The notes under the pieces: model-generated
Told to the model about the DNA's origin: nothing
The model's input: the letters and a program-made list of their open reading frames with translations, nothing else
Database searches by the model: none
NCBI GenBank assembly: GCA_004431415.1
Contig: QPMI01000662.1
Span: 62,001-126,000, forward strand
Source: Cyanophora paradoxa CCMP329
Lineage: Eukaryota; Plantae; Glaucophyta
Direction: 5' to 3'
Length of the DNA stretch: 64,000 nt
Position numbers and translations under genes: made by a program
Shown here: in pieces, positions 6,954-33,839 of the stretch
How positions within the stretch are numbered: the first letter of the stretch is position 1
Layout of the letters: the number at the start of each line of letters is the position of its first letter

Positions 6954-7978
6954 TCAGACGTCGACGTAGTTGGAGGCCTCGTGGTCCATGGCGGAGGGCG
7001 CCGGCTCGTAGAGGGAGAGCAGCCCGTGCACCGCGCCGTGGAGCTCCGCCTGCCGGGGGAGGTGAGAGGGGCTCCCGCCGCCGGGCCCGGGCCCCGCGCA
7101 CCCGCACGTCGGCCGCCGTGACGCCCTGCAGCCGTGCGTGCTGCACGCCCTTCTCCTCGCTCTGCCGCGCCGCCTCGGCGGCCCCGCGCAGCGGGCGAGG
7201 GGAGGAGGGGCGGACCCGCTTGAAGGTCATGGAGATGCGACCGGCGTTCTCGTTGGGCCACGCGTTGCGCGAGAGGCGCAGCACGAAGGTCCCCGCCGCC
7301 GCCCCCCGCAGCGCCGCGTCCGCCTCCTGCCGGCCCTCCTCAGCGGGGCGGCTGGAGGAGGAGGGGGCGGGGGGCGGGGGCGCGCGCCTCGAGGGTCATG
7401 AATGCATTGCCGAGGCGCGTGCGCCCGCCCGCCTCCTCGAACAGCTCCCGCGACTGCCCCGGCGTCAGGCGCAGGGGCGAGGAGACGGGGCCAGGGTAGG
7501 GCGCGGGGCACCCCGCGGTACACGAGGGCGGCGGGGCAGAGCCAGAAGACGAACTGGCGGCACATCGCTTCCGGGTACGCGTCCCGCGAGGGGAGGCCCG
7601 CTGCGGGAGGGCGTGAGCGGCAGCCGGGGGCGGGGCGGGGGCGGGGGCGGCGGGCGGGGGCTCGCCGTTGGCGAGGAAGCTGCCGAACTCGGCACCGTCG
7701 GTGAGCCCTGGGAGGTCGAAGGCGGCGGCCGCCGCCTCCCGCAGCGCCCCCCGCGGCCACGTCCGCCCCCCCTGCCCCGAGCGTCGGCCGGGCGGGGGCG
7801 GCCTGGTCTCCAAGAGGGGGGCGGGGGGGCGCACGGCGGGCCCCGGCTGCGAGGGCTGCGCCAGGAAGCGCGCCCAGAGGGCGACGACGTCGGGGAGCAT
7901 GCGCAGCACGCGGTGCTCCCCGCTCTCCCGCGCGATCCTGCGCGGCCCAGCCCGTCAGGGGGCGGGAGCTAGACGCGA

Positions 7979-8027
<49 letters not shown>

Positions 8028-10007
8028 ACTGCTTGCGCACGCCCTCGACGAACGCCTCGATAAAGTCCCGCGGGCGGCCCGTCCGCGCGAAGTCCTCCGC
8101 GTACTGCCGCCCCGCCTGAGCCGGGCAGGCGGCCCACGCCGGGCGCCGGCGCCGCACCTGGCAGAGACGCTCGTCCCGCTCCTTGCCCTGCACCGGCGCG
8201 CTCTGCACGTAGCCGCTAACGAACCCCGAGATGACGGCGTCTGCAGGCGCGTCAGGTGCGGCGCCGGAGCGGGGGCGGGGCGGCGGGGCGCACGCTGGGC
8301 GCCCTGCAGGCGAGCCTCGATGCTCTGCAGCGCCGCGAGCGCCGCCGGGGCGCTCGGGCGCGCCGCCGGATCCCGGTGCCAGCAGTTCAGCAGCAGCTGC
8401 GGCGCCGTCAGCCACGTTGCGGGGCCGAAGAGCCAACGCAGCGGGGCCCACCTCGTAGAGCTGCTCGGGGCAATCGGCAGGGATCGGGTGCCGCGCCGCC
8501 CGGCCCTCCGGTGCAGCCGCCAGCGCGCTCGCGATCTGCGGGGGCGGCGCCGCATTAGGTTTCACGCCTTGGGGGGCGGGGCGGGCTCTGGGGCGGGCGC
8601 GCCTGGGCGGGGGAGAGGCCGTCGTAGGGGGCCCTGCGGGTGAGGACCTCGCAGCAGACGGTCGCGAAGCTGTACACGTCCGACGCCGCCGTGCACGGCC
8701 CCCCCGCGAGCACCTCCGGCGCTGCCCGGCCGTGAGGCGCGCGGAGCCCACGGGCACAGGGCGGGGCCGGCGGGGCGGACCCGTCCAGGGGAGGGAGCCG
8801 GGGGTCTCCGAGGGCGGCGCGGCCGCGCGGACGATGGCGGAGACGGCGGCGTCGGAGAGCCGCGCCGTGTAGCCCGTCTTGCTCCAGCTCAGCAGCACGT
8901 TCGAGCTCTGCGCCGACCCGTCGGGCCTCCCGGGGGCGCGGGGTGCGGCGGGCGGCGCGCCTTGAGGTCCCTGTGGGCGACTCCGAAGGCGTGCAGGAAG
9001 GCCAGGCCCTCGCAGACCTGTATGTAGGAAGGGGTGAGGGGGCGGCCGGGCGGGGCGGGGCGGAGTGCAGGTGGGGCACCTCCCGCATGAGCCGCACGCC
9101 CTCCAGCAGCGGCAGGTCGACCGCGCGGTCCCTCAGCACCCGCTGCAGGCTCGTGTCCATCGCCTCCTGCGCCGCATCGGTGTGAGGCGCCCAAAGGGGT
9201 GTGCAGCGATCGAGGCCGACCATCGCGATGCAGAGGGGCGCTTCCCGCGTGCAGAAGAGCTTCGGCTGCACGAGGCGCTCGTGCCTCAGACTGCACTGCA
9301 CGCCCAACTGCAAAATAGTTGAGGGTTAATGTTTGACGCACGCCCGACTTTTGGAGCCGCGCAAACCTCGTGCTGGATATCTCGCACCGCCGCCTCCGGA
9401 AGAGTCACAAAGATTTCCTTCGCCGCCAGGGGCTGTCCGAGGTACCTGCGGAGACATTTGATCAAACCTGAGAGTAAAAGCGCACCATGAGGCACGCACA
9501 CTGCCCGGGACACCTCGGCGTAGCTTCTGCGGGCAGCATTCGGCTCAGCCACGTGGGCGGAACTCGAGCTCTGCGAACGCTCACCCGCGACCTAATCTGG
9601 CGCTCCGATCGATGAGGAGATCCTTCCGATCTGCATGGGATGTTGATGGCCCAGCGTGAGGCCGGCCCGGGAGCCCGCATCCAAAGAAAGCAGCGTGCCG
9701 CACCGATCTCGCATCGCGCAGGATCAGCTGACGGCAAAGACGGGATCTGCTGCGCTCGTAGACGCAAAACCTCCAGCAGCTCGGGCCGCGGCGCATTCCA
9801 CGCAGGAGCTAGCATGTCGGTCAGCGGCGGCATATTGGACTTATAGCGAAGCAAATGATGCCACCGACCTTCCGTCGTCTCCATATATGGTGCTCGGGTG
9901 ACGCGGGTGAGAGTCCGGCCACCTGACACCGACCTGACACACCCGAATTCGAAATTGCGGTACCGGTCACGCGCAGCGCGGTTGAGTAGCTGCAGCCTCG
10001 GGCGCAT
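6954..10007 (-). CDS. Degenerate TKL kinase + helical linker + SH2 domain + Tyr tail (SHK-like); start uncertain
   Basis: LAAKE, VCEGLAFLH, AHRDLK/SSNVLL, SDAA in place of DFG, APE, SDVYSFATVC, CWHRDPAARP. SH2 core GTFVLRLSRNAWPNENAGRISMTFK..VQHARL. Ends ASNYVDV* (TGA 6954-6956). Confidence 0.8.
7980..8026. repeat. (GGC)n trinucleotide microsatellite, ~15 units, probably intronic
   Basis: Uninterrupted ggcggc run. Confidence 0.9.
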
Positions 10008-12999: not shown

Positions 13000-15900
13000 A
13001 TGGCGAGCTGGCCATGGATATCCTCAAAGTCGTGTGTGAAGCAATTGCAACTGCAGCTATAGCTAGCCGAGCGTCGAGTGCGCATGCGCATGCGAGGAAT
13101 CAGGTGACCTCTGCGGGGTACGTATACGGGGCGGGTGCAGGGATACGACATCAGCTTTGGTGCTGCTGTGGTGCAGCTATAGCTAGCTGCTGTTTCAGAT
13201 GTCCGCAAACTATATCAATCCGGGCGAGCTTCGGGACGTTGTCGCTCTGCGGAACGTATTGGAGAGACGGCCAGAAGTTGTGTACGGCGAGCTGAGCGAT
13301 GTATCGAACGCACCGGCGGGTATCGTGCCGGTTGCGCCGACCGCACCGGCATCGCCCGTCGCGCCGCCGGTCATCGCCCCAGCGCCCATCGCATCAGCGG
13401 CGTCGGTTGTCATAGACGCGCCCCAGATCCCATTTCAACTCATCCTTAACGCAACGAAGTGAGCTGCGGTCGCGCTGGTCTTGCCGCGACGCGCGCTGAC
13501 CAACGATATCGATCAAAGTAACTTCTTCAAGAGAATCGGAGAGGGAAAGTTCGGTACGCGTGTATCTGCTGGCTAGCGTTATATTTGCTCACGTGTACTT
13601 TGTTTCAGGGGTCGTCTACCAGGGCAAGCTGTCATGGGAATCCAAAGAAGTCGATGTAGCTGTCAAAGGTCCGTCTGGGCGTGTGTGGTGCTCGCCTTGC
13701 GACCAACGGGCGCCCCGACAGTGCTCAAACCTCAAAGCGAAGACGAGGCACGAGCTCGAGCCGCTCAAAGCGAACAAGAGGCACGCAGAGCCAGGGAGCT
13801 CAGGATCAAGGCACTCAAGGCCGAGGCGCTCGAAGTAGAAACACTTCGCCAGTTGGGCGCTGACAACGTCAACGTCGTCGTTTGCATCGGCTTCTGCATC
13901 GTCCCCCACGATGTCCCCGTACGCGACATATCCAAGGACTCGCTCTGCATCGTGTACGAGTACGTAGGGCCCAGCATCGAGGATGTGCGCGCGCCCCCCG
14001 CGCCCCCACCCTCCTTCTTTCCTCGGCCATGGCCGACGCGAGCCCCTCAGCTCTGGCTCCGAGATGAGAAGCACCACCCGCTGCCGCCGCCCCCTCCCAG
14101 CTTGCCTGCGGCTTCACCGCCGACCTGGGAGCAGCGCGTCCACATTCTGACTGAAATTGCGTGCGCTCGACCTTCTCATATTGCGTTCTGAGCTCAGGAA
14201 CCTCCTGCAGGAGCGGATTGAGCTTTCTCCACTCGGTTCGCGCGGTGGGCGACTTGCGGCTTCATGCTTACGGCGTATCTGCAGCAAAAGATTATTCACC
14301 GGGACTTCCGGAGTGCGAACATCCTCCTGCGCAGCGACATCGGCCGCCCGGGCGCCGCAGTGATCGCGGATTTCGGCCTGTCTGCTCGGACCGATGGTGC
14401 GGTTTGCGGATGTGCGGGCATGCGTTATGTTCCGATCGGGTTCCGCCTCTAGCAGAATCGCAGGAGGTGTCAGCCCAGAGGAGCAAGAGGACCGCGCCAG
14501 TTGGGTACACCGACCCAGAGTACTGTGCGCCACTCCCCTCGTCCCGCTCCTCTCCCCCCCACCCCCACCCCACCCCCCCACCCCCACCCCCACACCCACC
14601 CCACCCACCCCGCCCAACCCGCACCCTCCACTTCCTCAGCCCCCCCCACCCCCCCCCCGCCCCGCCCCCACCCCCACCCCCCCACCCCCCACCCCACCCC
14701 CCCAACCCCCCACCCCCAACCCCCACCCCACCCCGCACCCTCCACTTTCTCAGCCCCCTTTCTCCCCCCCCTCCCCCGCCTCATCCTCTACCCTCGCCCC
14801 CTCCCGCACTCCCCACCCCCTCTCCCCACGCGCGCCCCATTCAAGGCTTCCTGCCCTCCTCCACCCACTTCCCCTCCCGACTCCAAAGCTTCGCCCGTTC
14901 ACGTTTTCCATCCTCAGTGATCTCGGGCAAATTCACACCAGAGAGCGACGTGTTCGGGTTCGGCATCCTGGTGCTGGAGATGGTCACGGGTCTGAGGGGG
15001 TACGTGAAGGAGCGCACGCCGCGCTCCCTCGTCCAGATGCTGCGGGTCCGCACCCCCCGCGGCCGACGCCCATCCGCCCTGACAAGGGGCCCCTCGCCTG
15101 TCGGCCAGGACAACTGGGAGCACGAGGACTGCTGGCGCATCATGGCCGACAGGCTCGCTGGCGAGCCCCCACGGCTGATTGTGGAGTTCCTCTTGGGGGT
15201 ACACCTTCCCCCGCTCTCCCCCCGTCCTCTCCAACCGACCGGCTGCGCGGCCGCAGCTGGCAAAGGCGTGCGTGCAGCTGCACGGGAAGGACCGCCCGAG
15301 CTCTCAAAAAGTCCACGAGAATATGGCGAGCCTTTCGAGGCAGGACGTCATCTCTAGGACGCAGGTGCGCCCTTCCCTCACGCCCCCGCTAACCCCCTTC
15401 CCCCCTAAACCCCCTTCAACGCCCCCCCCCCCCCCCCCCCCCTGCCCTCCCCATCCCACCCCACCCGCACCCTCCTCCCGCCCTCCCCTCCCCACCCTTT
15501 CCCGCCCCACACCCGCCCACCCACACCCATCCCACCCCCCACCCCCACCCTGCGCCCCCCGGCCCCCGGCCCCGACCGACCGGCTCGAGCAGGAGGTTTT
15601 CAACAAAAACCGCAAAGAGTACCGGTGCGGCCGGCGCGCGCCTCCGGCGGCGCCGTAGCGCCGACTGAAGCGAGCGCACGCGCCCCCCTCAGGAAGAAGA
15701 ACGACATATACGCGTTCCAGTCCGAGGCCGCCCCGACGTTTGGCCCTTACGCCGTGCGCAACCTTCCCGTCCTCCCACTTTCTCTGAGCTTCCGCGCAGG
15801 GCCGGCAAGGCGGTGCGGCGAGATGTGGCTTGAGCCGCCGGCCCCGCGGAGCTGACCGCTCCCGCCCAAACCCGCAGACTGGGTCGTGACGTCGTGCTAC

Positions 15901-16841
15901 CGCGAGGAGGGGAAGAGGGCCGACGTGTACGCAGTTCGTGCGCTCCGCCCCGCCCCGCCGCCGCCGCCTCGTGGTGATCGGCCCCACGCAGCCGACGAGG
16001 TGCCCCTCGAGCACGCCCTCTCCTGGCCGCCCTGCCGCCCCGGCTTTCCCTGACTCTCGTCTCTTCTTTCCGCGTCGCGCAACCAGAAATTCAAGAAAGT
16101 GCTTGCGGTGCCTGCTCGTGCCGGTAGTGCTCAGAGCTCACTCGCCCGGCGTAGACGTACAAGCCCGTGCCCGGCCAGAAGAACATCTGGCGCAAGGAGA
16201 CCACGGTACGCGCTCAGCTGTTCGTCGGGACGTCGGGGCCGGAGCGGCGCTGAGCGGGGGACGGCAGGTGTTGGCGGCACAGATGAACGAGCCCTTTGCT
16301 GTGGTGCACGCCCCTTCGCCTGGCGCGACGTCTCCGCTCTTAGCTAAGCGTCGAGGGGTCTCCAGATTTCTCGCGAAGGCTACAGCGAGGGGCGGTAAGC
16401 CCCGCGCCGCTCGCGCCCTGCGCGGTCGCGCCGGACCCTTAACAACAGCCCGCTGCAGCCCCGGGGACTGGCTGGCCGGCACAGACGTCACCCAGCAGGC
16501 TCGCCGCGGCCCGGTCGCCCCCCTCTCGCCTCCTGACCACCCCGCAGTACGTGATCGAGGCAGGCAAGTTCGAGGAGCTCTACGAGCCGGCAGACGCGCC
16601 GCGCCGCGCGAGCTCCGCCCAGGCGGAAGAGCCGCCCGGACAAGCCGGGCGGCCGGAGCCGGGGTCGGTCAAGCAGCCGGCGCCAGGCGCGTCGGAGCCA
16701 GCGGGGCAGCCAGAGCCAGCGGGACAGCCGCAGCCGGGGGCGGCCTTCGGGGCGGGCCCGGCCGTCGTCGTCGGCCTGGCGGCCGCCGCCCTCGGCTACC
16801 TCGCCGGCCTCGCGGGGACGGGAGGCGGGCGCGGCGCGTGA
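13000..16841 (+). CDS. RLK/Pelle (IRAK)-like kinase with C-terminal tandem PGDYG-like repeats and hydrophobic tail; start uncertain (13000-13199)
   Basis: IPFQLILNATN/NFFKRIGEGKFG/VVYQGKL, VAVK, IVYEY, TWEQRVHILTEIA, IIHRDFRSANILL, IADFGLS, GYTDPEY, SDVFGFGILVLEMVTG. Then PGDWLAG..YVIEAGKFEELYEP and AVVVGLAAAALGYLAGL before the stop at 16841. Confidence 0.85.
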
Positions 16842-18440
16842 GCTGCCCGCGGCCCCCGCTGCGCGAGGCACCGCCCCGGCAGACCCTGCAGACGCCAGAT
16901 GGAGAGAGAGCCGCCTTCGAATGCTGGCGGGCCCTTCGGTCTGGCCAAGGGCCCCAGCTGCAGTCGGAGCCTCCGTTTCATCAAAGTCTTATAGTTCCCC
17001 TGTTGACAAGCTTAAGTGCAATGCTTGTCTGCCAGTTATTTTTGCTGCCCGCTTCTGAAATTCTCCCTTACGCTTGTGCGTCTAGTTCTGTTCAATTCGA
17101 TGTTGCTAGCACTGGCTCATGGTGTTCACTTGCCGAGCTCTAGCTCATGATCAGTTTTCGAATTCGAACATATATAGCTAAGCAGTTTCGGATTCCACAC
17201 TGCAGCTGCTAGGCTATCATCGACATGTGCTAGACTGCTAGACGTAGGAGAATTAACCGTACGCGTTGAACTTCGATTCAGAAGATCGATTCGGTCACTA
17301 AGTCAGCAGATCTGCATACAAGCGAGTCCCTGCGGAGCAGGAGTGGCCTTGGGTCTTGGGGTCTCAAGGCGTGAGGGTGGCCGCTCTTTGTTTTAAAACG
17401 GGGCCCGCAACCGCGCGCGGTTCAACGGTTACGGGGGAGGGGGGAGGAGAAATATGGGGGTCCACTCGGCAAGGGTACACACTTAAGTGAGAGGGTACAG
17501 AATTGTGCTGCAAGGGTACAGATATCGATGCGGGGCCGAATCGGCCGTCGTCACGTCGACGTTGATCGATCGTCGATCGCGATTCACACGAACAGAGTTT
17601 TTTGGTAATCCAATCATTGATGTTGTGATCGGCCAAACGTTCGCCAAACGATTGCCAACAATTCTTTCAATTGCGAGCGCCTAATTGATCTGCCAATTAC
17701 TTCTAACCAATTACTAACAATGACAGGCGTGTCGGCTCTGTTTATGAGTCTGTGAGAATTTGCATTGGCGAAGGGGAGCCAATGACATTTGCGCTTGTCC
17801 GTGAGTGGGGCGATTGAGCTTTTTGGCCAATGGCGATCGGGCTTAACGCGAACAATTTCGTTCGTACGTGCTGTTAGTGCTCGTTAGAGTTGTCACATTT
17901 GAAAAGTAGCGCCGCCATCGTGCTCCCTAGGGTCGAAAATGGGTACTACGGTACCTAGGTCTAAAATTTTTGTCTATAATCTCAGTTTGAAGTTCGGGAC
18001 AAGATAGGCACAGACCTAAGGGCCTCTCCTTTCCCCAAGGCCGATATATGCAGTGATGAGCTATATGTATATAGCCTAGTAGCTACGAGTTTCACTGATC
18101 ATGTATTGCCTCACGGCTTTACGCCGTCAGGAGCCGGCGCCCCGAGTCTCGCTACCGTAGTACTCGCAGTGCTTGGCCTTAGTCTCTGCAGCGCTCGCAT
18201 TGAGTGCGCCGATTGGACCCCCACTACTTTTCATGTACCCCTCCCGGGCTCACACCCCGGGTGACACACTTGTACCCGGTACTTGTGCTTGCTCTTGGAA
18301 TACCAGCTCTGCTCGCTCTCGCTGCCAGCCTGCTAGAACTGCACAGCACGCATGGCTAAGCCTAGCAGCACCGTAAACTAGGCTCTTCTGACATGAGTCA
18401 CATGTACACTGTGCACGTGACAGCGCTAGATCCTTCAATC

Positions 18441-18899: not shown

Positions 18900-21800
18900 T
18901 CAGTCGATCCCGGCAGGCCCGGGCACGTTGACGTAGACTTCGGGGCTCTTCTGCGCGTAGTACGGGGAGGCGAGCGCCGCCTGCGCCCCGCTCAGCTCCT
19001 GGATGTAGCTCTGCGGGCAGCGGGCGATCGCGCGAGCGTCAGTCGGGGTCGGCGCCGGCGATCCGCGCATGGACCCGAGCCTGCGCCGGCGAGGGCGCAC
19101 GCGGACGTGGGCGCTCGACGCCGGTTTCATGCGCGCGTGCTTCAACTCGCCCTGCGCCTCCCGCGGTCAACGGCGAGGGGAGAGCGCGGCTCCGAGGCCC
19201 GGGGCGCACGGCGCGGTTCTTGAAGGTGACGCAGACGTAGCCGGCGGACTCGTCGGGCCACGGGCGCCCCGAGAGGCGCAGCACGAAGGTCCCCGGCGGG
19301 CTGACACCGAGCAGACCCTCGGCCTCCTGCCAGGAGAGGAACGCGTCGCCCAGCTGGTTCCGCGCCCCCGGCCGGAAGACGTCCATCATCTGCGCGGCGA
19401 GCCGGCCCTCAGCGGCGTCGGCCGACGCTCCAGGCTCGATCCCACCTCCTTGTACGTGCGGGAGGCGGGCAGGACCCAGCAGCAGAAGAGCATCACCTCC
19501 TCCCTCGTGTACGCGCTCTTGCCGCCCGTGCCCCTCAGCCCCTCCCTCTCCACTGCGCGAAGGCGGCCCTCAGCCGGCCGCGCCGTCCGCAGCGCGAAGG
19601 AGCGCGGCGCACGGAGGTCGAAGATCTTGGCGAACTGCTCGTCCGTGATGCGCGGGAGCTGGAACTCGCGCTCCGCGGCGGCGAGCAGCGCGGCGCGCGG
19701 CCAGCGCGGCGGCGCGCCGCCGGCCCCGCCCCGCCCCGCCTCCGCCTCCACCGGCGTGTCCATCACGCGCTCCCACAGCTGCACCACCTCCGGCAGCAGG
19801 CGGATCTGCCCCGCGCCCCGGCGGCGTCAGGCGGGGCCTGCGCGGCGGGGAGGGCGCGGCGGCGCACCGCTCGCTTCTCCTTCCACTCCTCTTCCGTCTC
19901 AGTCCCTTCGGCGCTGCGGTGCAAGGGCTCAGGCCGAGCCGTCGCGGGGCAGGCGCGGCGGGAGCAGGCGGGCCTCGCTGCGGTGGGGAGGCGGGCGAGC
20001 AGGCGGGCTACGAAGGTGTGCAGGAGCTCGCCGCTCATCCGGCCCCGCGCGTAGCGCTTTGCCACCTGCGCGAAATGCCCCCGCGATGGGGATCGTCGCC
20101 GGGGGCGGGGGCGGGGGCCGAACCTCGAGGAGGCGCTGCGCCCGCCCGTGGGCCGCCGTCTCCCCGGGCCCTGCCCGCTCCCGCAGGTACCCCTCCACGT
20201 CCTCGTCGATCAGCCGCACTGCGCCGCGCGCCCCGTGGGCCGGCGCGGCGGGCCCACGGCGATGGCGCGGCGCGCACGGGCCGAGGAGCGCGCCGCCGCC
20301 TCGATCTGCACGAGCTCGTCCCGCGCCCCGGCCGCCGTCGGGCGCCGCGCCGGGTCCACCTGCCAGCACCGCAGGAGCAGCTGCCGGCCCTCGCCCTCAG
20401 ATCCGGATTTGGCGGGGCCTGAGGCGAGGGCGGGGCGGGGCGGGGACCTCCTTGAGAGGCTGGGGGCATTCGACGGGGAGCGGGTGGGGCGGCTCCCCCC
20501 GCTCGACGATGCCTCGCACCCGCTGGTAGAACTGCCGCCGCGGGGCCCTCAGCGGCGGGCCGCCGCAACGGGGGGCGGCGGGGGCGTGCCACGCGGGAGT
20601 CGCCGTTGAAGGGGAGCTGGCGGGTGAGGACCTCCCAGCAGACGGTGGCGAAGCTGTACACGTCCGACGCCGCCGTGCACGGCACCGCGCCCGCCTCGTC
20701 CCTCTCGTCGAACGCCAGCACCTCCGGCGCTGCCCGGCCGCGGGGCGCGAGGTTGGCGCGCGCGGGGGCGGTGGCGGGCGGCGGGGCGGCGCTGGCACCG
20801 GCCCAGAAGCCGGTGCCGCCGGAGCCGCCCTCGGCGGCGAGGCGAGCGAGGCCGAAGTCCCCGAGCTTGCAGGCGAAGCGGTCGCGGCCCTCCCACCGCA
20901 CCAGCACGTTCAGGCTCTGGCCCCGCCCCGCGCTCGGGGTTGGGGCGGGGGCCGGGGGCCGGGGCCGGGAGGGCGCCACCTTGACGTCGCCGTGGACGAC
21001 GGGTTCCCTCGCCCCGTGCAGCGCGCACAGCCCCTCGCACACCTGCCCGCCCGCGCCGCCCCGCGCCGGCGTCAGCGGCCGCCCGCGCCGCCCCGCCGCC
21101 CCCGCTCAAACGACGGCGCGCCTCGCGCATGACGCGGAGGCGGTCCTGGAAGCCGAGGGGCACGTCCTCGACCCGCGCCAGGACGCCCTTCCGCAGGTCC
21201 CCGTCCATCCGCTCCTGCCCCCACCCGGGGCCGTGAGCTGCAGCTGCAGCCCGAGGCGTCTCGAGGGCGGGGCCTGGCGCGGCGACGCACCATGACGATC
21301 TGCACGGGGGGCTCCATGCACGCGTACTTGATCTGCACGATCCGCTCGTGCCGCTGCCGGAACTGGATCGCGAACTGCGCGCAATTGCAAAACTGTAATT
21401 TATAAGCTTCTCGAGTGGCCCCCCAGGAGCGCCGGCGGGGGCAGGCGGGGCGGGCACCTCGGAGACGAACTTGTAGTAGTCGGGCTTGAACTCCTTCACG
21501 GCCACCCGCTCGTGCATGTACCTGCCGCCCGCCCCTCAGCCCGGCGACCCCCCAGGCCTGCAGGGGGCGGGGATTGGGGCGCACACTCCCTCGTACACGT
21601 CCCCGAAATTCCTGCGCGGGGCGGGGCTGAGCGCCAGCTAGCGTGGCGCCAGGCAAACGAGCTCGAGGGCGCAGGCGGGTGCGGACCCTCGGCCGAGGAC
21701 GCGGCTCCTGTTGACGTGCAGGTGCTGCCGGTCTGCGCGGCCCGCGCGCGCACGCGAGCGGCGCAGTCAGCTGGGGCAGGCGATTGGTCTCGCAGTAAAC

Positions 21801-24800
21801 GACGCTCGCCGATCGAGGCCGCGGCGACGAGCACGTCGGTCGTATCGATGAGGGGGCTGCGGGAGGCGCCGCCCGTGCACGTGGGCGAGGTGGGTATGAC
21901 GACCCCGAGCAAGGCGGCCGCGGGGGCAGCGCCAGGCGGCGCGGGGGCAGCGCCCGGCGCGGCGGGGGCGGCGCCGGACGACGCCGAGGCGGGGGTGGCT
22001 GCGGGGGCGGCGCCGGCCGAGGCGGGGGCATCGGCTTCGCCGGAGGCGGCGTCGAGCTCGAGGGGCACGTATACGAAGCCGGGGGAGGTGACCCAGCGCG
22101 CCGGCTCGGCGAGGAGGTGGGCGAGGGGGAGGACCTGGCAGGCGCCCGTCGCCGCGTCGAGCTCGAGGACGGCGCGCACGGCGAAGGCGACGCCGCGCGC
22201 GAGGGCGTCGCCCGTGAGCTCGTGGGGGAGCAGCTCGCGGTCGCTGCCCCGCCCCGCGCGCGGGTCGAAGCGGAAGGTCACCGTCGGCTTCGGCTCCGCG
22301 GCCGCGTGCACGGGCACCTCGGGCGCCGAGTAGTACAGCGACCGCGACGACCCCGAGAGCCCCGACTCCTCGTGATCGGACGCGGCGGCGAGGGACTCCG
22401 TCGCCGCGAAGGCGGGGTCCACTATGGAGCCGGCAGCGTCCATGATCAGAATATCCGCTGGCGACGGCGGTGCCGGCGACGCGCTGGAAGGCAGATAGTC
22501 CCGCTCGAATCCGGCTTCCTCGAGCTTCATTTGTCTTGTCGCCTGCGCTTGTGCCCCAGCACCCTTGACGGCCTCGACGTACGTCGACGCCTGCGAGATT
22601 GTCATATGTTTCGAAGGAAAAAAAGCTGATCACAAGATTTCGAGAGGCACGCACCTCGATTTGAGGGAGGGACCGGAATCGAAGAAGGCCGTGCAAGCCT
22701 GAATTAACAAATATCTGGCGTGCACGTGTACGTAGAGTTTGAGCCATGCCGAGATAATGCGGCCCCGATGAGGCGCACCATTACTTCTTCGTGCGAATAA
22801 AACGGCGGCACGCGCGCGTGCACGACTTGCTCGTCCTGCCACGCGTAAGTGCAATGTCGACGCGCGCGCTCATGATCACCTAAGCTCTTAGCTTCGAAGC
22901 TGAGGAGCTCCAAACGATGGCGGGGCCCGGGCCGGGGGCTCACCATCGGACATTTGTACGTGACGATGGGATCGCCGGCGTACTCGTTGGGCCAGGGGCG
23001 CGAGGAGAGGCGCAGAACGAACGTGCCGGGGGTCTGATCGGCAATCCTCCGCTCCGCCATCTGCACCGGCACCGTGATTGGTGTCACATCAATCCGCTGC
23101 CGCGTACGACTGGTTTATAATTACCTCCAAGCTGAGGAATGCGTCGCCGATATACAAACTGTGCTTTGGTCCCCTCAGGAAGAGATCTTCAAGCTGCGGC
23201 CACGGGCGTCGTGGCGGGCAGGAAATCAGAGAGGGGAGGGCAGGGGAGGAGCGCGCTGAGGGAGGGGGGTGAAGGCGGGGGCGGAAGAACCTGGCGGTAC
23301 TTGCGGGCCGTCGGAAGGAGCCAGAAGCAGAAGTCGCGGAGCTGGTCCGCCGTGTAGGCCTCCTGCTGCGGCAGCTCCGCTGCGTGTCCCCGGTCCGGTC
23401 AGCCCCGCGCGGAGGACGCGCGCGGGCGCCGATTGATGCGAGACGCGCCGACTGCGAGAAGATCGCGGAATTTGTCGTCGGCGAGGGAGGCGAAGCCGAA
23501 CTCCTCGCCGGCGACTCCGAGGAGGGCGGCGCGGCTCCAGCGGGGCCCCTCCGGGCCGGCGCCGCTCGGGGCGTCGAGGCAGCGCGCCCACAGGCGGACG
23601 ACTTGAGGAAGCATCTCCAGGACCCGCAGCTCTCGTTGCAACGCGTCGCGATCGTCTTCCTTTTCGTCCGTCATCCTGCGCGCTGTTCAGTCAATTATAA
23701 TGCAGGGAAAATCTGTATACAAGGGCCTGACGCGCCGACGCTGCACGTCCGCGACAAAGGCGGTCAAAAGCTTCTCGGCCTGCGGGCTCCGCACGAACTC
23801 TTCAGCCACCTGCAGAGGACCAGACCCGTTGGCAACCGCTGCAGTAAGAAAACATCTGCAATGCAACGCGGACCGCACGAAGGCGGGCCGCCCGGACCCG
23901 GACGCCTTCTGCGCTGTTGCCGAACGCGAGGCGATCTCGGAGGAACGATGCTGCGTGCGACTTAATGGAAGAAGCTGCAGCGGGGCGTCAGCGGATCACA
24001 GCTGGAATGCGTTCATCTGGAGTCGTGCACATTGCTGCCGGGCGTCGTCGTCGAGTTGGCGGAGAATGCGGTAGGCCTTCCCGGCCGTGGGGCGGCCCGA
24101 GGGATCGCGGCTCCAGCAGCGCGCCAGCAGCTGCTCGGGGCGTCGATGAGGGCGGAGAGACCGCGGAGCGCGCGGGCCTCTCGGAGGGCCTCGGGGCAAT
24201 CCGGCGGGATCGGGTGGGGGAGGGATCCCTCCTGGCCGGCCTCCCCGAGGACCCGCCCGACGATCTGCCCCCCCACGAGATCGGTACCGTTAACGGTGTT
24301 TGGGGAGACTAGATCTAGAGCGCTAGCGCAGCCGCTGGCAGCTGCAGCGGCACCTCTTCGCGGCGGAGGCCGGCGTGGGGGAGCTGGCGGGTTAGGACCT
24401 CCCAGCAGACGGTCGCGAAGCTGTACACGTCCGACGCCGCCGCGGGCGTCTGCCCCGCCATCACCTCCGGCGCTGCGCGGCTGCGAGATATGCGGGCCGG
24501 CGTTTTTGTTCTATGCAGGGAGAGGTGTAGCGGACCCATCCAGGGGAACGAGCCGCGGCAGGGTGAGATGTGGCGCTCGGGTTGCGCAGAGCTGGGATCA
24601 AGCTCATTATCAGCCTGCGGCTGGGCGATTGTTGCGAGACCGAAGCCTGAAATCTTGCAGGTGAGATGGCTTGGCTTTTGCTCTTCCTTCTTCACTAGCA
24701 CTTCCAGGCTCTGCGCAGAGCAGTCGACAAGTGGCACCGTCCTGTCAATGATGCGCAAATTTCACGTATACGTACCTTTAAGTTGCCGTGCACGACGGGC

Positions 24801-27800
24801 TGCGCGGCGCCGTGCAGGGCGCACAAGCCCTCGCAGATCTGCCGTGAGGCGCCGTTAGCGGCGACGGACGAGGAGCGGTCAATCGCACGAAGGGCGAGAT
24901 GGGCGGGCCTCGCGCATGATGCGGAGGCGGTCGGCAAGGCTCAGCTCGATTTCGGGCTGGTTCAGCACTGCCGAGCGCAGGTTGCCGTCCATCCGCTCCT
25001 GCGGGTCGGGTTAAGCACCATCGATATCATCCATGCATATGCATGCAACCATCCGTCATCGAGCAGCAGACCATGACGATTCTGAGGGGAAGCTGCTGCG
25101 TCTGGGCGCCCTTCAGCTGTACCACGCGGGCGTGCCTGAGAGAGAACTGAACGAAGAGCTGTGGGGGCGTTGGGGCGATTGCAAAGAAGGAGCACAGCGG
25201 GAGATGCGGAAGAGCGGGCCTCGGTACCGAACTCGGCGTTGTAGTACTCGAAGAACTCCTTGACGGCGACCGCTTCTTGCATGTACTCCCCCTTGTACAC
25301 CGTCCCGCTGGACCTGTCGAGCGACACTCATGATCAGCCACGGTCTACAGTACAGCATCATTGGAGCGGACCTGCGCCCGAGCTTTTCGCCGACTGCGAG
25401 GAGCTGAGGGTCTGCGTGCGCGTCACCACGTGCGCTGAGCGGCAATTGCAACTTGCCAGTTGGGAGATTCGCACCGATTTCGCCGAGGATTGCAGCGTCG
25501 AGGCGGCCATCCGCGTCTGCACGCAATCGAGTGTGGGCTCGAGTACCGCGAAAACAGTTATAAGGAAAGGGATGACCAGGGCCGGGAGGATGGAGCTGGA
25601 GCTGGAGCTCAACCGCCGAGCTTGATTTCTCCGGATCGGCACTCTGCAGCAAACTCTCCCACAGCAAACTCTGCAGAGCGATGTAACGAGCTGATTGCTC
25701 GAGATGCAGCGTCAAGCTGGAGCACCTCGGGCTCGAGCCCCCTAGAAATGATTGGTTTCGACGGTGTGCCCTGGACGTCGAGGCCGAGTGCTTTCGAGCT
25801 TGAGAGCGGAATGGTCAGCGCTCTATCGAGCCTTTCTTCCAGGTCCGCGTAACGATCGGCGGCATCGGCGAGGAAGCCGCTGAGGACGAAGGCGTCCGAG
25901 CCCCACGTCAGCGGGCACAGCTCCCCGCTCACCTCTGACGCGCATTTTCAATTGGTTCGGTGCGCGAGAGGTAACAAAAATAGAACGAATACGCACCAGG
26001 AAAGTTCAACGTAAGAGCCCCGAATTGTATCTCCAGAACTCCGCATCGCGCGAGAGCCTCCGCGCCCTGCTTGTCTAAAAGCTTCAGCCCCTCGGCTGCC
26101 CAGCGCGGGATAGCAAGATCGACGATGAAAGAGCCCTCTGCAATTCTTTGTACGGCCTGCGAACGATCGCGAAGTTTAGACGCATAAAGCAAGATAAAGA
26201 TTGCAATGCATGAGAAAGGTGGAAACAGCAATATCAATATGAGATGGCACCTGGGACAGCGACCGGGACTGGGATCGAGTCGCTAGGGTATAGAACGAAT
26301 GCGATAGGTTCTTGAAATACTGCGCCGCGCGCATAGACCTGGTAAAACAACAACGCGACACGTGCCTCGAACGCAATTAAGAGGTTCTCACCGGCAGAAT
26401 CGCGCACTTTGCGGCACCCAAAGCCAGTTTCATCACGCCAAAAGGATCAACCAGAGCCGCAGGACTTGTTCCTTTGATCGAAACAACCTGGAATGTGCCA
26501 TGGCCAGTTGGTTGAAGTAACGATATCGATGCGAGCAAGGGAGATTCGGCGACCTCGGTGGTGTGGAACAACGATTCGGCGCTGACGGGAGGTCCGGAGG
26601 GCGATCTGAATAGGATGCTACTCAAGAATGACCGCTGCTTTGACGCAGCCGCTGCAGCTGCATCCGCCATGTCTTTCAGCTCCTTTCGCAATTTCTGCAC
26701 AGATTCTCGTACAGCGGGCCTCTCATTGGCCTCGAAGTCTGAATAAAACATATCAGATTTATTCGCATGTGCAGATCTAGACAACAGATCGCTAGAAACA
26801 TACTGGTACCTCGACGGGGGAGGAGCCCGGAGATGTAAAGAGATGCCCATAGCTCGGCAGCCGAACTGACGTTCGGCTCGCTGACCTGGGCACGCGAAAG
26901 CAGGATCGACATCGCAATATCAATGAAGCCGCGACGCAACAGTTTTACGTATACGTACCCGCAGTATCCGCGAGAGAACGCCCAGGACGACGGGACAAGA
27001 TCGAATGTCCGAGCGGGTATCTCGGACGTGCTGGATCGCGTTCCGAATTTCTTCTGCATCACGCTGTTCACCAGCCATTCTCAATGATCTGCAGCTGCGA
27101 AGGATCCGGATTGACAATTCGTCAGACAGATTCCAAAAAACAGACGGCAGCGGTGCGGTGATACCCGGAGAGCATCGACAGAGCTATTCTCCCGACGGCA
27201 TAGACATCGTCACACACGCCCGTGGATGGTGCAATCTGATAACCTTGAGAGTTGAGCGATGAGCAAAAGTGTTCAAAGCTGCGTATGCTCACATCTGCAG
27301 CAGCGTCGAATGCTGGACGCTCGAGGCTTGCGTCCTTCAGTCGCCTGGCGAGGCCAAGGTCCTCAAGCATGTACCTGCACGCTGTGATTTCAGGAGATCG
27401 ATTTCATAAATTCAACCTGGGAAATCGCACTGGGGGCAGCCATCGAATGGCGATCGCGACATGAGGACCGCAGAGGGGGATATGCGCTCATGGGCCAGTT
27501 CGGCGTCCGTGTGTATGTGATGCAAGATAAATGACATCTGCGCTGAAACATGAAATGGATTTGTGCTGTTAAACGACAACCACACCTGCTCCAGGAAACA
27601 AAGGACGTCCTCCACATCGCATCGGCTGCGGCGACTCAGAACCTGCTGCACGCTAATTACAAAAAGTCGGTCAGTGATCTGGAAGCAGGAAGCTGCGAAC
27701 GAAAACCTATAGCTACCTCTCTCCTCGAACGCGGGTCTTGACGACGGCGTTGCGCTCGGCACACGCGTCCCACAGCGTGGGGACGCCGTAGCAGCGGAAC

Positions 27801-29731
27801 CAGGCGGCGTAGGCGAGCGCCCGCTGCGCCGCCCGCCACGGGTCCGGGGGCGCCTCGCGATCGTTCTCCTGCCTGCGGCAGAGCCCGGCCCGCTTGAAGA
27901 CTTCCAGTCGAGCGCGGGGCTTGCGGTGTCGCTTGGCGGCAGCACGCGACGGGCGCTGAAGAGCGCTCCAGTCTGAAGCCGCCGGCAATGCTCTTTTGTC
28001 TCCGGCTGGTACTGAGGCGGCTGTCAAAAGCGAATCTATAATGATTACTAGCTAGCTACATTACGATAGCCAGCTATTACGAGCGAAAATATGGCCACTT
28101 GAAAGAGATCTAGAGAAAAAATGTCATATGCACCTCGCGGTGCTGCTGGATGAGGTGCTCGAGGCCACCCTCCGGCCGCACATCCGGCCCGAAGATCTCA
28201 GAAAATCGCATGTCGCCGCGGACAGCGAGGGGGCGCCTGCAGACGTCGCAGTCGGGGCCGTCGCCCTGAGGCTCCACGTCATTCTCCACCGCGCAGTTCG
28301 TGCAGGTATTTTTCTGCTTGGGCGTGAGCCATAATGGCCATCGCGGCTATCATAGAAGTGGCTGAGAAAGGCCGCACCGGGATAATGCTTGACGTGACAG
28401 GGTCCCGCGAGTTCAGCAGACGAGACAGTGCAGAGGCGGTGCAGGTTGAACTCTCCCCCTCTGAACGTTCGTAGTCGGAGCAGGAGGGCCAGCGCATGCG
28501 CAAGCCCCGCGGAAGGCTGTCGAAGACGGCTAAGCGCGGCTCGAGATAGCAGATGACGATTCGCTTGTTTCCGCTGTAAGCATAATGGAACTCCTCTGCA
28601 AAAGCAGTTAAGTATGTTCAGCGCTGCGATAACGCCGGCGCAAGCGTAGATCGTGCAAGATGCGGTCGAATTCGAAGTCAAACGCACCGCCGCAGTACTG
28701 CGAAGCTGCCGACCGCCTCGACGCAAAGAAGAGGAGGTGCGTGCTCCCCTCAATGCCTCTTGCGACTGCAGCGCGGTCGCGGTCAATAGATGACCGGCTT
28801 GAAATCCAGGGGCCGGGTACAGATATCGATACGATCGTATCTCTGTGTGCGCACTCTCATCCACCCAACGATCACCTGTCCGGTCCATCGTCATGAGCCG
28901 GCTGGAGATTCGAAGAAACCTCAAGCACATGCTTACCGTCTTCCAGCTGTTCGACGTCGAGCCTGTTTTCGCGTGTAATTATAAATTTGAAACACGCCAC
29001 GTAAATGTCTAAAGCAGAGCGGGCACCAGAAATGCGCGCCGGGGTCCTGCCTCTCCAGTTCGCTCTTGATGCGCGCCATGTTGTTGCTGTCCGAGCGCGA
29101 GTAGCTGATGAAGACCCTGACTGGAGCTTGCGAGGGCCAGGCCCGCGGCCGACGTTCGCCGGGCGCCGTCCCCGTTCTGCATTCTTGCTGCTCGCCCTCG
29201 GTCGTCGGCGGGGGCTTGGCGCTGGCTTCGCGCAGCGCCCTCTCGAAGGCATCCACGCGACCGCTGTACCCAGGAACGCCGGGAAGCCCGAATTCGTAGA
29301 GCTTTGTGAACTGCAGAGGGAATGAACAAGGAGGTTTGCTTTCCTGCAAGGATTGCGAGAGATGTTATTATGTCGCTTACATTAATGCCGCTGATGCGCA
29401 TGCTGAGGCCAGGGGCGTTCTGTAAAACCAGATTCTCATCTTCGAGCATAATGACAAAACAGTGGGCGTTGCTGATCGCTAATCGCGTGCAAATCAGGAT
29501 CAGCTGAAAAAGTAGAATAGCATGCTAGTGTTCGAATTCCGCGTACGCATGCGCACCAGCCATGAGCTCATTCACGAAATCTTGATTCTGCACCGACCGA
29601 ACAGATGTGCATACGAAGAAGATGCGCTGACTGGTCCCCGTTTGTGAAGCAGCACCGGTACCGGTGCCGGATCCATGAATACGCCCGCCAGCTACGGCGA
29701 CTTCGAATTCCCCTGCCGTTCCCGCGGCCAT
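18900..29731 (-). CDS. Giant multidomain signalling protein: (TIR)-TIR-Zn ribbon-pseudokinase-TRADD-N-like-pseudokinase-SH2-kinase-SH2
   Basis: Manual splicing at GT/GC-AG sites keeps frame from the intact TIR (VFISYS..WLD..IARGIEGS..SQYCGEEFHYA) through CxxC..CxxC, HERISPSAVL/EDLGLAR, IAEGSFIVDL, HGNLK/SGFG, GTFVLRLS, GRGNFG/VAVK/HGDVK/DFG/APE and GTFVLRLS to EVYVNVPGPAGID*. Single-transcript status is inferred. The first exon junction and one junction near 27950 are ambiguous. Confidence 0.72.
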
Positions 29732-30428
29732 GGCAGACGCCTGCAGCTGCTCGCCGGCCGCGTCGCCATGTGCATGTGCATGCATATGCATGCATATGGA
29801 GAACCTCGGCCTGATGCATATGAGCGATCAATATGGGGCGCCCGGCAGAACTGCCGCAGCAGTCGGGCAGGCTCTATGGCGCACCGGGGGCGCAGCTGCA
29901 CGCCGCGCTTGCTGAGCTCCGCGAGGAAGGCCGCCAGGCGCGGGTCCCCGAGGTCCGCCTCCAGCGCGCAGAGGTCCGCGCAGAGCGCCGCGCTGAAGCG
30001 GAGGATGGGGATGAGGATCATGGTCGCAGCCGATCATGATGGCTTACTCGCATGAATATGCATACGCGCACCTCGGCCGTGGACTCGAGCTCGCCATATG
30101 CATTCAAAGACGGGGCTATGCGTCGAACGCGATTAGCTGCAATGATCGAGTTGTGTACACGTCAATGTGAACCCATTGACGCCCGTGGCCGCACGAGGGA
30201 GCTCGAGGTGTGCAGCTGTTAGATGGCAGTTACACGGCAGTTAGCACAAGAAGCATCAGGGTGCTTAGACTGTAACCTAGACGCACCAGCACGTGTTCCC
30301 AATCGCTCGTCCGCCGGCAGCGGCCGAATTGGCGGACAATGGCCGTCTGTTTGGGGGTACCGCACACATCCAAGCCCGCCGGCCTAGCACTGCCTAGTAT
30401 AGTGCCTACTTCGATCGAGGAGCCGGCG

Positions 30429-32092: not shown

Positions 32093-33839
32093 TTAAGCTT
32101 CGAATTCCGCGGCCGTCGTGCAATCGATATCGAGCCTCGAGAGTGAGAAGGCGGAGGGGGCGGGGGGCCGGGCGGCCGCGGCGGCGGCGGCCCAGCGCCT
32201 GACGCGCGGGACGAGGCAGCAGGCGAGGAGGGGCGCGAGGAGGGCGGCGACGAGGCAGGCGGAGAGGTAGAGGTGCCCGGCCACCCACTTCACGGCCGCC
32301 GCGTCCGCCTCGTGCCAGCCTGCCGCCCCGCCCCGCCCCGTCACGCCCCGAGCTCGAGCTCGGACGGCGGCGACCGGCGCATGCGCAGCGCACTGCTGCC
32401 GCCGACGTGGGAGACGAATGCCGTGTTCCCGCCACCGATGTACGGCTCATGAGAGAGCACCAGCACCGCGTCTTCCGGCGCCGTTCGCCCCGGCCTGCCC
32501 CAGCCGCGTGACAGAAGGCGACGAAACGGAGGAATTGAGTACCACTGTGCGTGGATGCGGTCCCACGCAAAGCGGGCGGCCTCGGGGCCACCGCGCGAGC
32601 GCATGTACTTGGCGAGCTGCGCCAGCGGCCCGAGGCCTGAGCGGGGCCCCGGCGGGAGGGGGCGCGAGGCGCTCGCCTGTCGGGAGAGGAAGACGGTGCC
32701 GGTAGAGAAGAGGACGGTGAGGTAGGGGGCGCCGTACGATCCGGCGGCGCCCCGCAGCCCCTCCACCGCCTGCTCGAAGAAGGGGTGCCCGGGCCGCGAG
32801 ACCAGGAAATCGTTCGTGATTCCCGCAGGCTCCGTGCTGAAGAGCATCGCCTGCATGACAATCACCCGCTTTGGGCGGCGCGGGGCGGGGCGGGGAGCTC
32901 GAGGGCGGGGAGGGCCGGCGCACTGGGGCGGTCCTAAGGGTGTCGGGGGAGCGCATGCAGACGACGTCGAGATCGGCGTAGACGCCGCCGAGGCGCGCCA
33001 TCACCATGTACCGCAGCGCGTCCGCCCGCTGCCCGCCCGCCGACCCGGTGGGTTCTTTTATTGAAACAAATTTGGTGCGCGTGGGGGTAGGGGGAAAAAA
33101 GAGGGAGGAGGAAGGGCGGGGGGGGGGGGGGGGCACCTGCACGAAATTGGGGTACGCGTCGTAGATGGGGAGGATGTCGGGGTACTCTTTGGCGACGAAG
33201 GCACGCGCCTTCTCGTCCGTCCAGAGCACATACGAGTACCTGCAGTGTGCGGCAACAGGACCAGATCAATGCTCAGAACGCCGAACGCCATTAGACGGGG
33301 CGTGGTGGTGGGGCGGGGCAGCGCGGGGCGGGGGCCGGGGGAGGGGAGGGGGGGGGGGGGGGGGGAAGGAGGGGGAGGGGGGGAGGGGCGGGCTGAGCAC
33401 CCGGGGAGTGCGTCGGGCTGGCAACTGTAGCTCGCTTTCTTCCACCTCGCGGGCATCTCTCGCTCCTGGCCCTCCGCCTGCTTTGGCCCGCGCCCACTGT
33501 CCAGCCACTGCACGCGCGTATTCGGCGGATGAGAAGCTTAAGAGAGAGGCTGCGGCTGGGCGGGACGTGGAAGCGGACGATCTGGTGGAGGACTTTGGGG
33601 ACGGCCGAGCGCTCGAGGAGCGGCGCCACGCGCTCCTGGAACTCCCCGTCCTCCCCGTTCAGCTCCAGCAGCCGCCGCGCCTCCTCCTCCCCAGCGCGCG
33701 GCGCGACCGCCGACGAGCATGCGCGGAGGTCCGACGCCAGCGCGATGCCCCATGCGGTTGCGCCGGCGAGCGCAACCGCCACGACCACAGCCGCGCCGCA
33801 GACGGCCGCGAACGCCAGCGGGCGCCTCTTGCGATCCAT
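32093..33839 (-). CDS. Glycosyltransferase family 32 (DXD), SUR1/CSH1-like mannosyltransferase
   Basis: N-terminal TM, VPKVLHQI/W, YVLWTDE, Q/RADALRY, GGVYADLD, HPFF, YLTVLFSTG, GWHEAD, C-terminal TM. Confidence 0.88.

What the first reader, a model, noticed from the sequence alone, without database searches (positions are those of the whole stretch)
18900..29731. Giant TIR-ZnF-pseudokinase-TRADD-N-pseudokinase-SH2-kinase-SH2 fusion protein
Seen: consensus splice sites join the domains in frame, for example IIP|KNTCTNC, GAAK|SMRAAQ..SQ|AVQRIAEGS, NFP|EVSG, LGR|RSSGTVYKG, PQIE|ASTYVEA, and a long open exon (22590-21810) leading to ASI|DRQHLHVNRSRVLGR|GNFG. Rough size is 2,000-2,700 aa. Sensor/adaptor (TIR, TRADD-N), regulatory (pseudokinases), catalytic and reader (SH2) modules of three separate animal pathways occur in one polypeptide. 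I know no described protein with this architecture. It is invisible in the ORF track because exons are tiny.
Basis: partly seen in the sequence, partly recalled or inferred. Interest (0 to 1): 0.9.

Follow-up and report, generated by a model that had tools for sequence, protein, structure and literature searches.

The report
Algal TIR–kinase–STAT-type SH2 fusion gene
The alga Cyanophora paradoxa has a real, spliced gene that joins an immune-type TIR domain to two copies of its own kinase-plus-STAT-like module, a layout I found nowhere else, but a one-base frame slip near the front means the full 2,300-residue protein may not be its main product.

Summary
Real and transcribed, with one flaw. 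The locus is Cyanophora paradoxa gene tig00021582_g22621 (public model 2,292/2,298 aa); my independent 57-exon model matches it at 55 exons. Order: TIR with the NADase glutamate, four-cysteine finger, dead kinase, probable TRADD-N-like domain, then two units of [TKL kinase, STAT-type linker-SH2, invariant tyrosine]; the first unit's kinase is dead, the second intact. RNA contigs join TIR to finger and tile from the dead kinase through unit 1 into the long exon, splicing out an apparent stop. Full length needs the annotated, unobserved acceptor 27,955. The long-exon-to-kinase-3 joint was not tested. The repeated unit is a small Cyanophora family (five units, four genes) and is STAT-like, not Src-like; the parts are not animal-specific. 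Likely mechanism (inferred): kinase 3 phosphorylates the tail tyrosines, SH2 domains pair with them and cluster the TIR. No paper or other genome showed this layout; the scan noted it only on this window.

The parts
18900..30097 (-).
29884..29993 (-).
   Evidence: codon-frame score +28.8
29381..29635 (-). Possible degenerate TIR-like alpha/beta segment (by eye only; no profile hit)
   Evidence: no family
28537..29115 (-). TIR_2 domain (aa 170-260) over five exons; Glu242 at 28593-28591 aligns with the WCxDE glutamate of Cat1
28233..28304 (-). CxxC-x14-CxxC four-cysteine finger (aa 317-338); family unassigned
   Evidence: sequence; joint to TIR exon in RNA
27019..28020 (-). Kinase 1, dead (catalytic loop HERISPSA, DLG); not TKL, weak hits to DAPK2, PknA and bacterial defence kinases
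27900..27906 (-). Frame slip inside the kinase 1 N-lobe; present in RNA contigs without indel
26004..26568 (-). Probable TRADD-N-like domain (aa 690-800), RRM-like fold, Gly757-Ser758 at the beta2-beta3 turn
25577..25934 (-). Unassigned ~100-aa segment (exons 19-20); apparent stop at 25611-25609 is out of frame after splicing
24053..25478 (-). Kinase 2 (unit 1), TKL-type pseudokinase: no glycine loop, HGN, GFG
22661..24046 (-). STAT-type helical linker + SH2 of unit 1 (Arg1406)
   Evidence: fold by homology to unit 2
21810..22590 (-). 781-nt exon: tail tyrosine Tyr1471 (22581-22579) of unit 1, then a coding-like 260-aa spacer
20297..21730 (-). Kinase 3 (unit 2), intact non-RD TKL kinase: GxGxxG, VAVK, HGDVKSLN, DFG, APE
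   Evidence: two spliced joints visible as loose ends
18969..20290 (-). STAT-type helical linker + SH2 of unit 2 (Arg2217)
18900..18935 (-). Tail tyrosine Tyr2282 (18935-18933) and stop codon
6954..9884 (-). Neighbouring stand-alone paralog g22617 (P0007): one kinase-linker-SH2-Tyr unit, DFG changed to DAA; transcribed
   Evidence: loose ends

Best explanation
One gene, built in the Cyanophora lineage by joining a TIR-finger-dead kinase-TRADD-N-like head to two members of a local family of kinase-STAT linker-SH2-tyrosine proteins. It works as a phosphotyrosine-switched assembly scaffold. Step 1 (shown): the parts lie in this order on spliced RNA, except for two untested links. Step 2 (inferred from motifs): kinase 3 is the only active kinase; kinases 1 and 2 are regulatory, kinase 2 perhaps restraining kinase 3 as in JAKs and Dictyostelium Pyk3. 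Step 3 (inferred from STAT analogy): kinase 3 phosphorylates the invariant tyrosine behind each SH2; SH2 domains bind these in trans, linking molecules and stand-alone paralogs. With two SH2/tyrosine pairs per chain this can give chains rather than dimers. Step 4 (inferred): clustering switches on the TIR, which keeps the NADase glutamate; an immune or stress role is a guess from TIR, non-RD kinase and TRADD-N context. In the sequenced strain the full-length form exists only if acceptor 27955 bypasses the frame slip; otherwise a TIR-finger product of about 470 aa is made.
For: RNA joints and contigs bridging TIR-finger, TRADD-N-like-kinase 2 (one 1,033-nt contig) and SH2-long exon; about 1,815 codons downstream of the slip stay open across 48 exons with kinase 3 intact; STAT linker-SH2 fold, Z 10.1 to Dictyostelium STATa over 162 residues, TM 0.62 to plant SH2 protein B; SH2 arginine and tail tyrosine invariant in all five units; units form one clade 99/100 and share 15 of 18 intron positions; TIR glutamate; TKL kinases phosphorylate STAT tyrosines in Dictyostelium (PMC4196871).
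Against: The bypass acceptor 27955 was not seen; two runs read through it and a third splices to 27976 or beyond. No contig covers 27764-27441; joint 21810/21732 untested. Kinase 3 has a Ser/Thr-type catalytic loop, so tyrosine activity is not given. No activity data for any domain. RNA depth is only 2-5 and contigs do not prove single molecules.
Confidence: 0.4

Rival explanations
1. A recently broken allele: the ancestral gene encoded the whole chain, but in the cultured strain the frame slip leaves only a TIR-finger fragment (or a decaying mRNA); the downstream part is silent or made from its own start, for example the ATG at 27537.
For: Best codon-frame fit is a switch at 27906-27900 (score 38 vs 23 and -26.5 for single frames); acceptor 28011 has a branch-like motif and agrees with RNA, and with the 64-nt intron gives a stop at codon 462-467 of my model; the only bin empty in all four runs is 27485-27684; other broken TIR genes were noted in this genome (s1-515192, s1-511090; not checked).
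Against: No second lesion in 48 downstream exons; acceptor 27955 scores within the normal range (4.9; tenth percentile of true sites 4.0); the slip sits in a dead kinase, where skipping the first strands costs little.
Confidence: 0.3
2. The full protein is made but is a general stress or cell-cycle signalling scaffold; the TIR is a docking domain without NADase output and there is no immune role.
For: TLR TIR domains also align with a glutamate at this place; Dictyostelium TKL-STAT signalling answers osmotic stress (PMC4196871); no sensor domain (LRR, NACHT, ectodomain, membrane helix) was found in the chain.
Against: Best TIR hits are NAD-cleaving or defence TIRs (Cat1, SARM1, Thoeris, TIR-SAVED, TIR-Argonaute); TIR before TRADD-N is a bacterial conflict-system layout (PMC8195603); non-RD kinases are linked with innate immunity (PMC8463890).
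Confidence: 0.22
3. Two or three neighbouring genes mis-joined by gene prediction.
For: Public model is an Augustus prediction (PMC6704402); unit 1 and unit 2 look like separate family members (unit 1 groups with P0005/P0006, 98/91); an in-frame stop exists at 25611 in unspliced DNA.
Against: RNA splices past that stop in three runs and from SH2 1 into the long exon in three runs; the long exon is coding-like in one frame throughout and unit 1 has no stop of its own; kinase 1 spans the uncovered gap.
Confidence: 0.08

Closest known systems
STAT proteins (Dictyostelium STATa 1UUS, STAT1/5/6) and plant SH2 protein AtSHB
   Same: Helical linker + SH2 fold, PGTF(L/V)LR motif with the phosphate-binding arginine, tyrosine just behind the SH2
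   Different: No DNA-binding or coiled-coil domain; a TKL kinase sits in their place; two units in one chain
Dictyostelium SHK kinases (kinase followed by SH2; from my own knowledge, papers not held)
   Same: TKL kinase directly followed by a C-terminal SH2 module
   Different: No SHK-like protein appeared among hits; tandem units, tyrosine tail, pseudokinases and a TIR head are not part of SHKs as I recall them
JAK kinases and Dictyostelium Pyk3 (PMC4196871)
   Same: Pseudokinase N-terminal to an active kinase, coupled to STAT-type SH2 signalling
   Different: Pseudokinase and kinase are about 530 aa apart; no FERM; kinase and STAT-like part are in the same chain; TKL rather than TK catalytic loop (as in Pyk3)
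Bacterial TIR-TRADD-N conflict proteins (PMC8195603) and TIR NADases (Cat1, Thoeris, SARM1)
   Same: TIR_2 with catalytic-position glutamate N-terminal to a TRADD-N-like domain that lies between modules
   Different: Intron-rich eukaryotic gene; C-terminal part is kinase-SH2 units, not TPR, STAND or caspase
Cyanophora stand-alone paralogs g2291, g17206, g22617
   Same: Same kinase-linker-SH2-tyrosine unit, 33-64% identical, one clade
   Different: One unit each, no TIR head; themselves undescribed as far as I found

Membership tests
TIR_2 / TIR NADase | TIR_2 profile above curated cut-off | tested here: met
   69.9 bits vs cut-off 28
TIR_2 / TIR NADase | Catalytic glutamate after the (W/Y)C motif | tested here: met
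   Glu242 aligns with the glutamate of Cat1 WCWDE
TIR_2 / TIR NADase | NAD+ cleavage on clustering | not testable with these tools
   needs an assay
STAT | Linker + STAT-type SH2 fold | tested here: met
   model pLDDT 74.5; Z 10.1, 9.4, 7.5 to three STATs, above all Src-type SH2s (6.9 or less)
STAT | SH2 arginine and tyrosine tail | tested here: met
   both invariant in five units
STAT | DNA-binding domain and coiled coil before the linker | tested here: not met
   kinase runs directly into about 190 helical residues; no STAT_bind or STAT_alpha hit
JAK | FERM-SH2-pseudokinase-kinase order with adjacent kinase domains | tested here: not met
JAK | Tyrosine-kinase catalytic loop | tested here: not met
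   HGDVKSLN, TKL type
Dictyostelium SHK | TKL kinase followed by C-terminal SH2 | tested here: met
   the SHK layout itself is recalled, not read here
Dictyostelium SHK | Orthology by sequence | tested here: inconclusive
   no SHK among 120 listed hits; word-based search limited to 8,000 candidates
TRADD-N superfamily | RRM-like two-layer alpha+beta fold | tested here: met
   single-sequence model pLDDT 64.7; all hits ferredoxin/RRM/SEA/ACT-like, Z up to 6.6
TRADD-N superfamily | Gly-Ser motif at the beta2-beta3 turn | tested here: met
   Gly757-Ser758 between predicted strands
TRADD-N superfamily | Significant profile or structure match to a TRADD-N member | tested here: inconclusive
   Pfam NCOA6_TRADD-N E 0.095, below cut-off; Atlas 0.89 with 174 shared features; TRADD itself not in fold lists
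IRAK/Pelle | Kinase groups with IRAK/Pelle | tested here: not met
   five Cyanophora kinases form their own branch, apart from the IRAK rows P0107/P0124; deeper forks unresolved

The most novel reading that the evidence does not exclude
Cyanophora makes a single-chain 'JAK-STAT without DNA binding': pseudokinase, active TKL kinase and two STAT-type SH2/phosphotyrosine pairs polymerise the protein and so fire a TIR NADase, with alternative splicing at the frame slip toggling between the regulated full-length form and a free TIR fragment. That would be phosphotyrosine-gated TIR signalling in an early-branching relative of plants.
Probability: 0.15. Interest if true: 0.85.

Novelty: new variant of a known kind. 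Interest (0 to 1): 0.55.

Why it matters
Plants and algae have almost no described SH2 signalling. A transcribed family that carries kinase, STAT-type SH2 and its own target tyrosine in one chain gives a small, directly testable model of how STAT-like switches work without JAKs, receptors or DNA binding, and the stand-alone paralogs (about 600 aa) are easy to express. The fusion to a TIR with the NADase glutamate suggests a new way to cluster TIR enzymes. The weight is limited: it is known from one species, that genome shuffles TIR domains into many layouts, and this allele may be broken.

Tried and rejected
My own first fix for the kinase 1 region (read frame A throughout and retain the 64-nt intron 27716-27653) keeps the frame open but scores -26.5 for codon usage and loses the kinase-like peptide; rejected as the selected frame. 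A profile of fetched kinases could not tell the three frames apart. Assembly error at the slip: rejected, two RNA contigs from two studies match without indel. Joint 24442-24976 is cross-mapping of kinase 3 transcripts on kinase 2, not a splice. P0003 is a repeat-rich spurious hit. No relatives of the linker-SH2 part outside Cyanophora; these searches are weak (one search missed even the three paralogs), so absence is not shown. No bacterial genome hit by pattern for the TIR. Literature searches for Cyanophora with SH2 or TIR, and the genome paper and its supplements, gave no mention. Sisterhood of units 1 and 2 was not rejected (AU p 0.23), so fusion of neighbours versus old internal duplication stays open.
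Full report
Source. A neighbouring TBC-domain gene matched an EukProt entry at 100%, and an exon of the finding retrieved P0002; both are Cyanophora paradoxa, a glaucophyte alga, gene tig00021582_g22621 with two predicted isoforms of 2,292 and 2,298 aa. The public gene set is an Augustus prediction trained by BRAKER; the genome paper does not mention SH2 or TIR (PMC6704402).

Gene structure. Before seeing the annotation I built a model from splice signals and the RNA joints: 57 exons, 56 short introns, one open frame of 2,322 codons. It equals P0002 at 55 exons and differs at the first exon and in the N-lobe of kinase 1. Searches used exon references or the stored public protein P0002; exons were joined only inside scripts to check frames.

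RNA. Seven runs guessed to be RNA hold 11-30% of the words. I laid four (three samples, two studies) on 22485-28480, the 6-kb limit. They show spliced GT-AG and GC-AG joints. One 1,033-nt contig runs from the TRADD-N-like exon to the middle of kinase 2 and its piece positions equal the sum of my exon lengths; it removes the apparent stop at 25611 through two introns, each seen in three runs. An 873-nt contig runs from the helical linker through SH2 1 into the long exon. The TIR exon joins the finger exon in two runs. Loose ends show spliced kinase 3 and the spliced neighbour g22617. Not covered: 27764-27441, everything upstream of 28480, and the joint from the long exon into kinase 3. Depth is 2-5 and these are contigs, so they show presence, not single molecules or levels.

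The flaw. The kinase-like peptide in 27900-27717 aligns with DAPK2 and PknA and has near-complete G/C at third positions in frame B, while the acceptors next to the finger exon (28020, 28011, 28005) enter frame A. The best codon-usage fit is one switch from A to B at 27906-27900 (38, against 23 for B alone and -26.5 for A alone). Contigs of two studies span this place without indel, so it is in the strain. The annotation avoids it with acceptor 27955. RNA does not show that joint: two contigs read through 27955, and bin depths place the 92 bases that follow the finger exon in run X2 at 27976 or higher (my arithmetic). With those acceptors and the 64-nt intron the frame stops at codon 462-467 of my model, 475-480 in P0002 numbering. 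Other open paths exist but use weak sites or non-coding frames. Against simple decay: about 1,815 codons over 48 exons downstream have no lesion. My estimates: ancestrally one reading frame 0.85; continuous frame from kinase 1 C-lobe to the end 0.9; full-length protein made in this strain, at least as a minor form, 0.45.

Domains. TIR_2 at aa 170-260, Glu242 in the catalytic position; nearest annotated hits are bacterial TIR proteins at 34-38% and defence TIR models. A four-cysteine finger follows. Kinase 1 lacks the catalytic aspartate and is not TKL. Residues 690-800 fold as an RRM-like sandwich with the Gly-Ser turn that marks TRADD-N and their best Atlas cluster carries TRADD-N families, but no score passes a cut-off: probable, not proven. 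In bacteria TRADD-N often sits behind a TIR effector (PMC8195603). The rest is two copies, 46% identical, of a unit also found as three stand-alone Cyanophora genes. The five units form one branch (99/100), units 1 and 2 share 15 of 18 intron positions, and unit 1 is closer to two unlinked paralogs than to unit 2, though sisterhood is not rejected. The part after each kinase, modelled from the five-unit alignment (pLDDT 74.5), matches STAT linker-SH2 best: Z 10.1 Dictyostelium STATa, 9.4 and 7.5 for two animal STAT chains; Foldseek gave Cbl and STAT rows without a significant E-value; Atlas gave plant SH2 protein B at TM 0.62 and STATs at 0.52. Kinase 2 is dead (HGN, GFG, no glycine loop); kinase 3 has every catalytic motif, a TKL-type loop and no RD arginine.

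Mechanism. Shown: order of parts, splicing over most of the middle, conserved residues, folds by prediction. Inferred from established systems: TKL kinases can phosphorylate STAT tyrosines and be restrained by a pseudokinase (Dictyostelium Pyk2/Pyk3, PMC4196871); STATs pair through SH2 and phosphotyrosine; TIR NADases need clustering (own knowledge). Together these suggest that kinase 3 marks the tail tyrosines, SH2 domains cross-link the chains and paralogs, and the TIR is thereby clustered. The trigger is unknown; no sensor or membrane domain was found. An immune role rests on context only (TIR type, non-RD kinase, PMC8463890).

Comparison and novelty. It works like a fused TKL-STAT switch with a TIR output, but it is not a STAT (no DNA-binding domain), not a JAK, and not shown to be an SHK orthologue. 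No paper or other organism with this layout turned up, within the stated limits of those searches. The scan's notes list 52 TIR findings in this genome (unchecked), so a TIR fusion is not rare here; the kinase-STAT linker-SH2-tyrosine family is the more distinctive part. Verdict: new variant built from known parts, real gene, full-length product unproven; interest 0.55.

Noticed in passing
window 6954-9884 (-); proteins P0005, P0006, P0007: Three stand-alone genes of the kinase-STAT linker-SH2-tyrosine family; g2291 and g17206 keep DFG and look active, g22617 has DAA. Pfam does not detect their SH2 domains, so they are invisible in domain surveys.
   Followed up: partly
window 4379-6360 (-): CAMK-like kinase gene whose kinase domain seems to be interrupted between the hinge and helix E by three exons (about 5880-5410) encoding an extra ~110-aa alpha/beta segment, by eye SEA-like.
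   Followed up: no
window 13190-16900 (+): Pelle/receptor-kinase-like cytoplasmic kinase (loop HRDFRSAN) with a long C-terminal extension, head to head region with g22617.
   Followed up: no
window 25577-25934 and about 22300-22040 (-); P0002 800-905 and 1560-1655: Each kinase unit is preceded by an unassigned ~95-aa segment with alternating strands and helices by eye, possibly a beta-grasp/PB1-like domain; no profile hit.
   Followed up: partly
window 21810-22590 (-): 781-nt intron-free exon in a gene whose median exon is 94 nt; coding-like throughout, rich in Ala/Pro at its 3' end; may be the seam where two neighbouring genes fused.
   Followed up: partly
window 18900-29731: Third-position G+C rises along the gene from 0.62-0.71 (TIR to TRADD-N-like) to 0.95-0.97 (unit 2), suggesting parts of different age or relaxed selection on the head.
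   Followed up: partly
window 21458-21374 (-): The two annotated isoforms differ only by an 18-nt alternative acceptor in kinase 3.
   Followed up: no
window 32100-33300 (-) and 2130-4071 (-): Ordinary neighbours: a DxD glycosyltransferase-like gene upstream (by eye) and a TBC-domain gene g22615.
   Followed up: no
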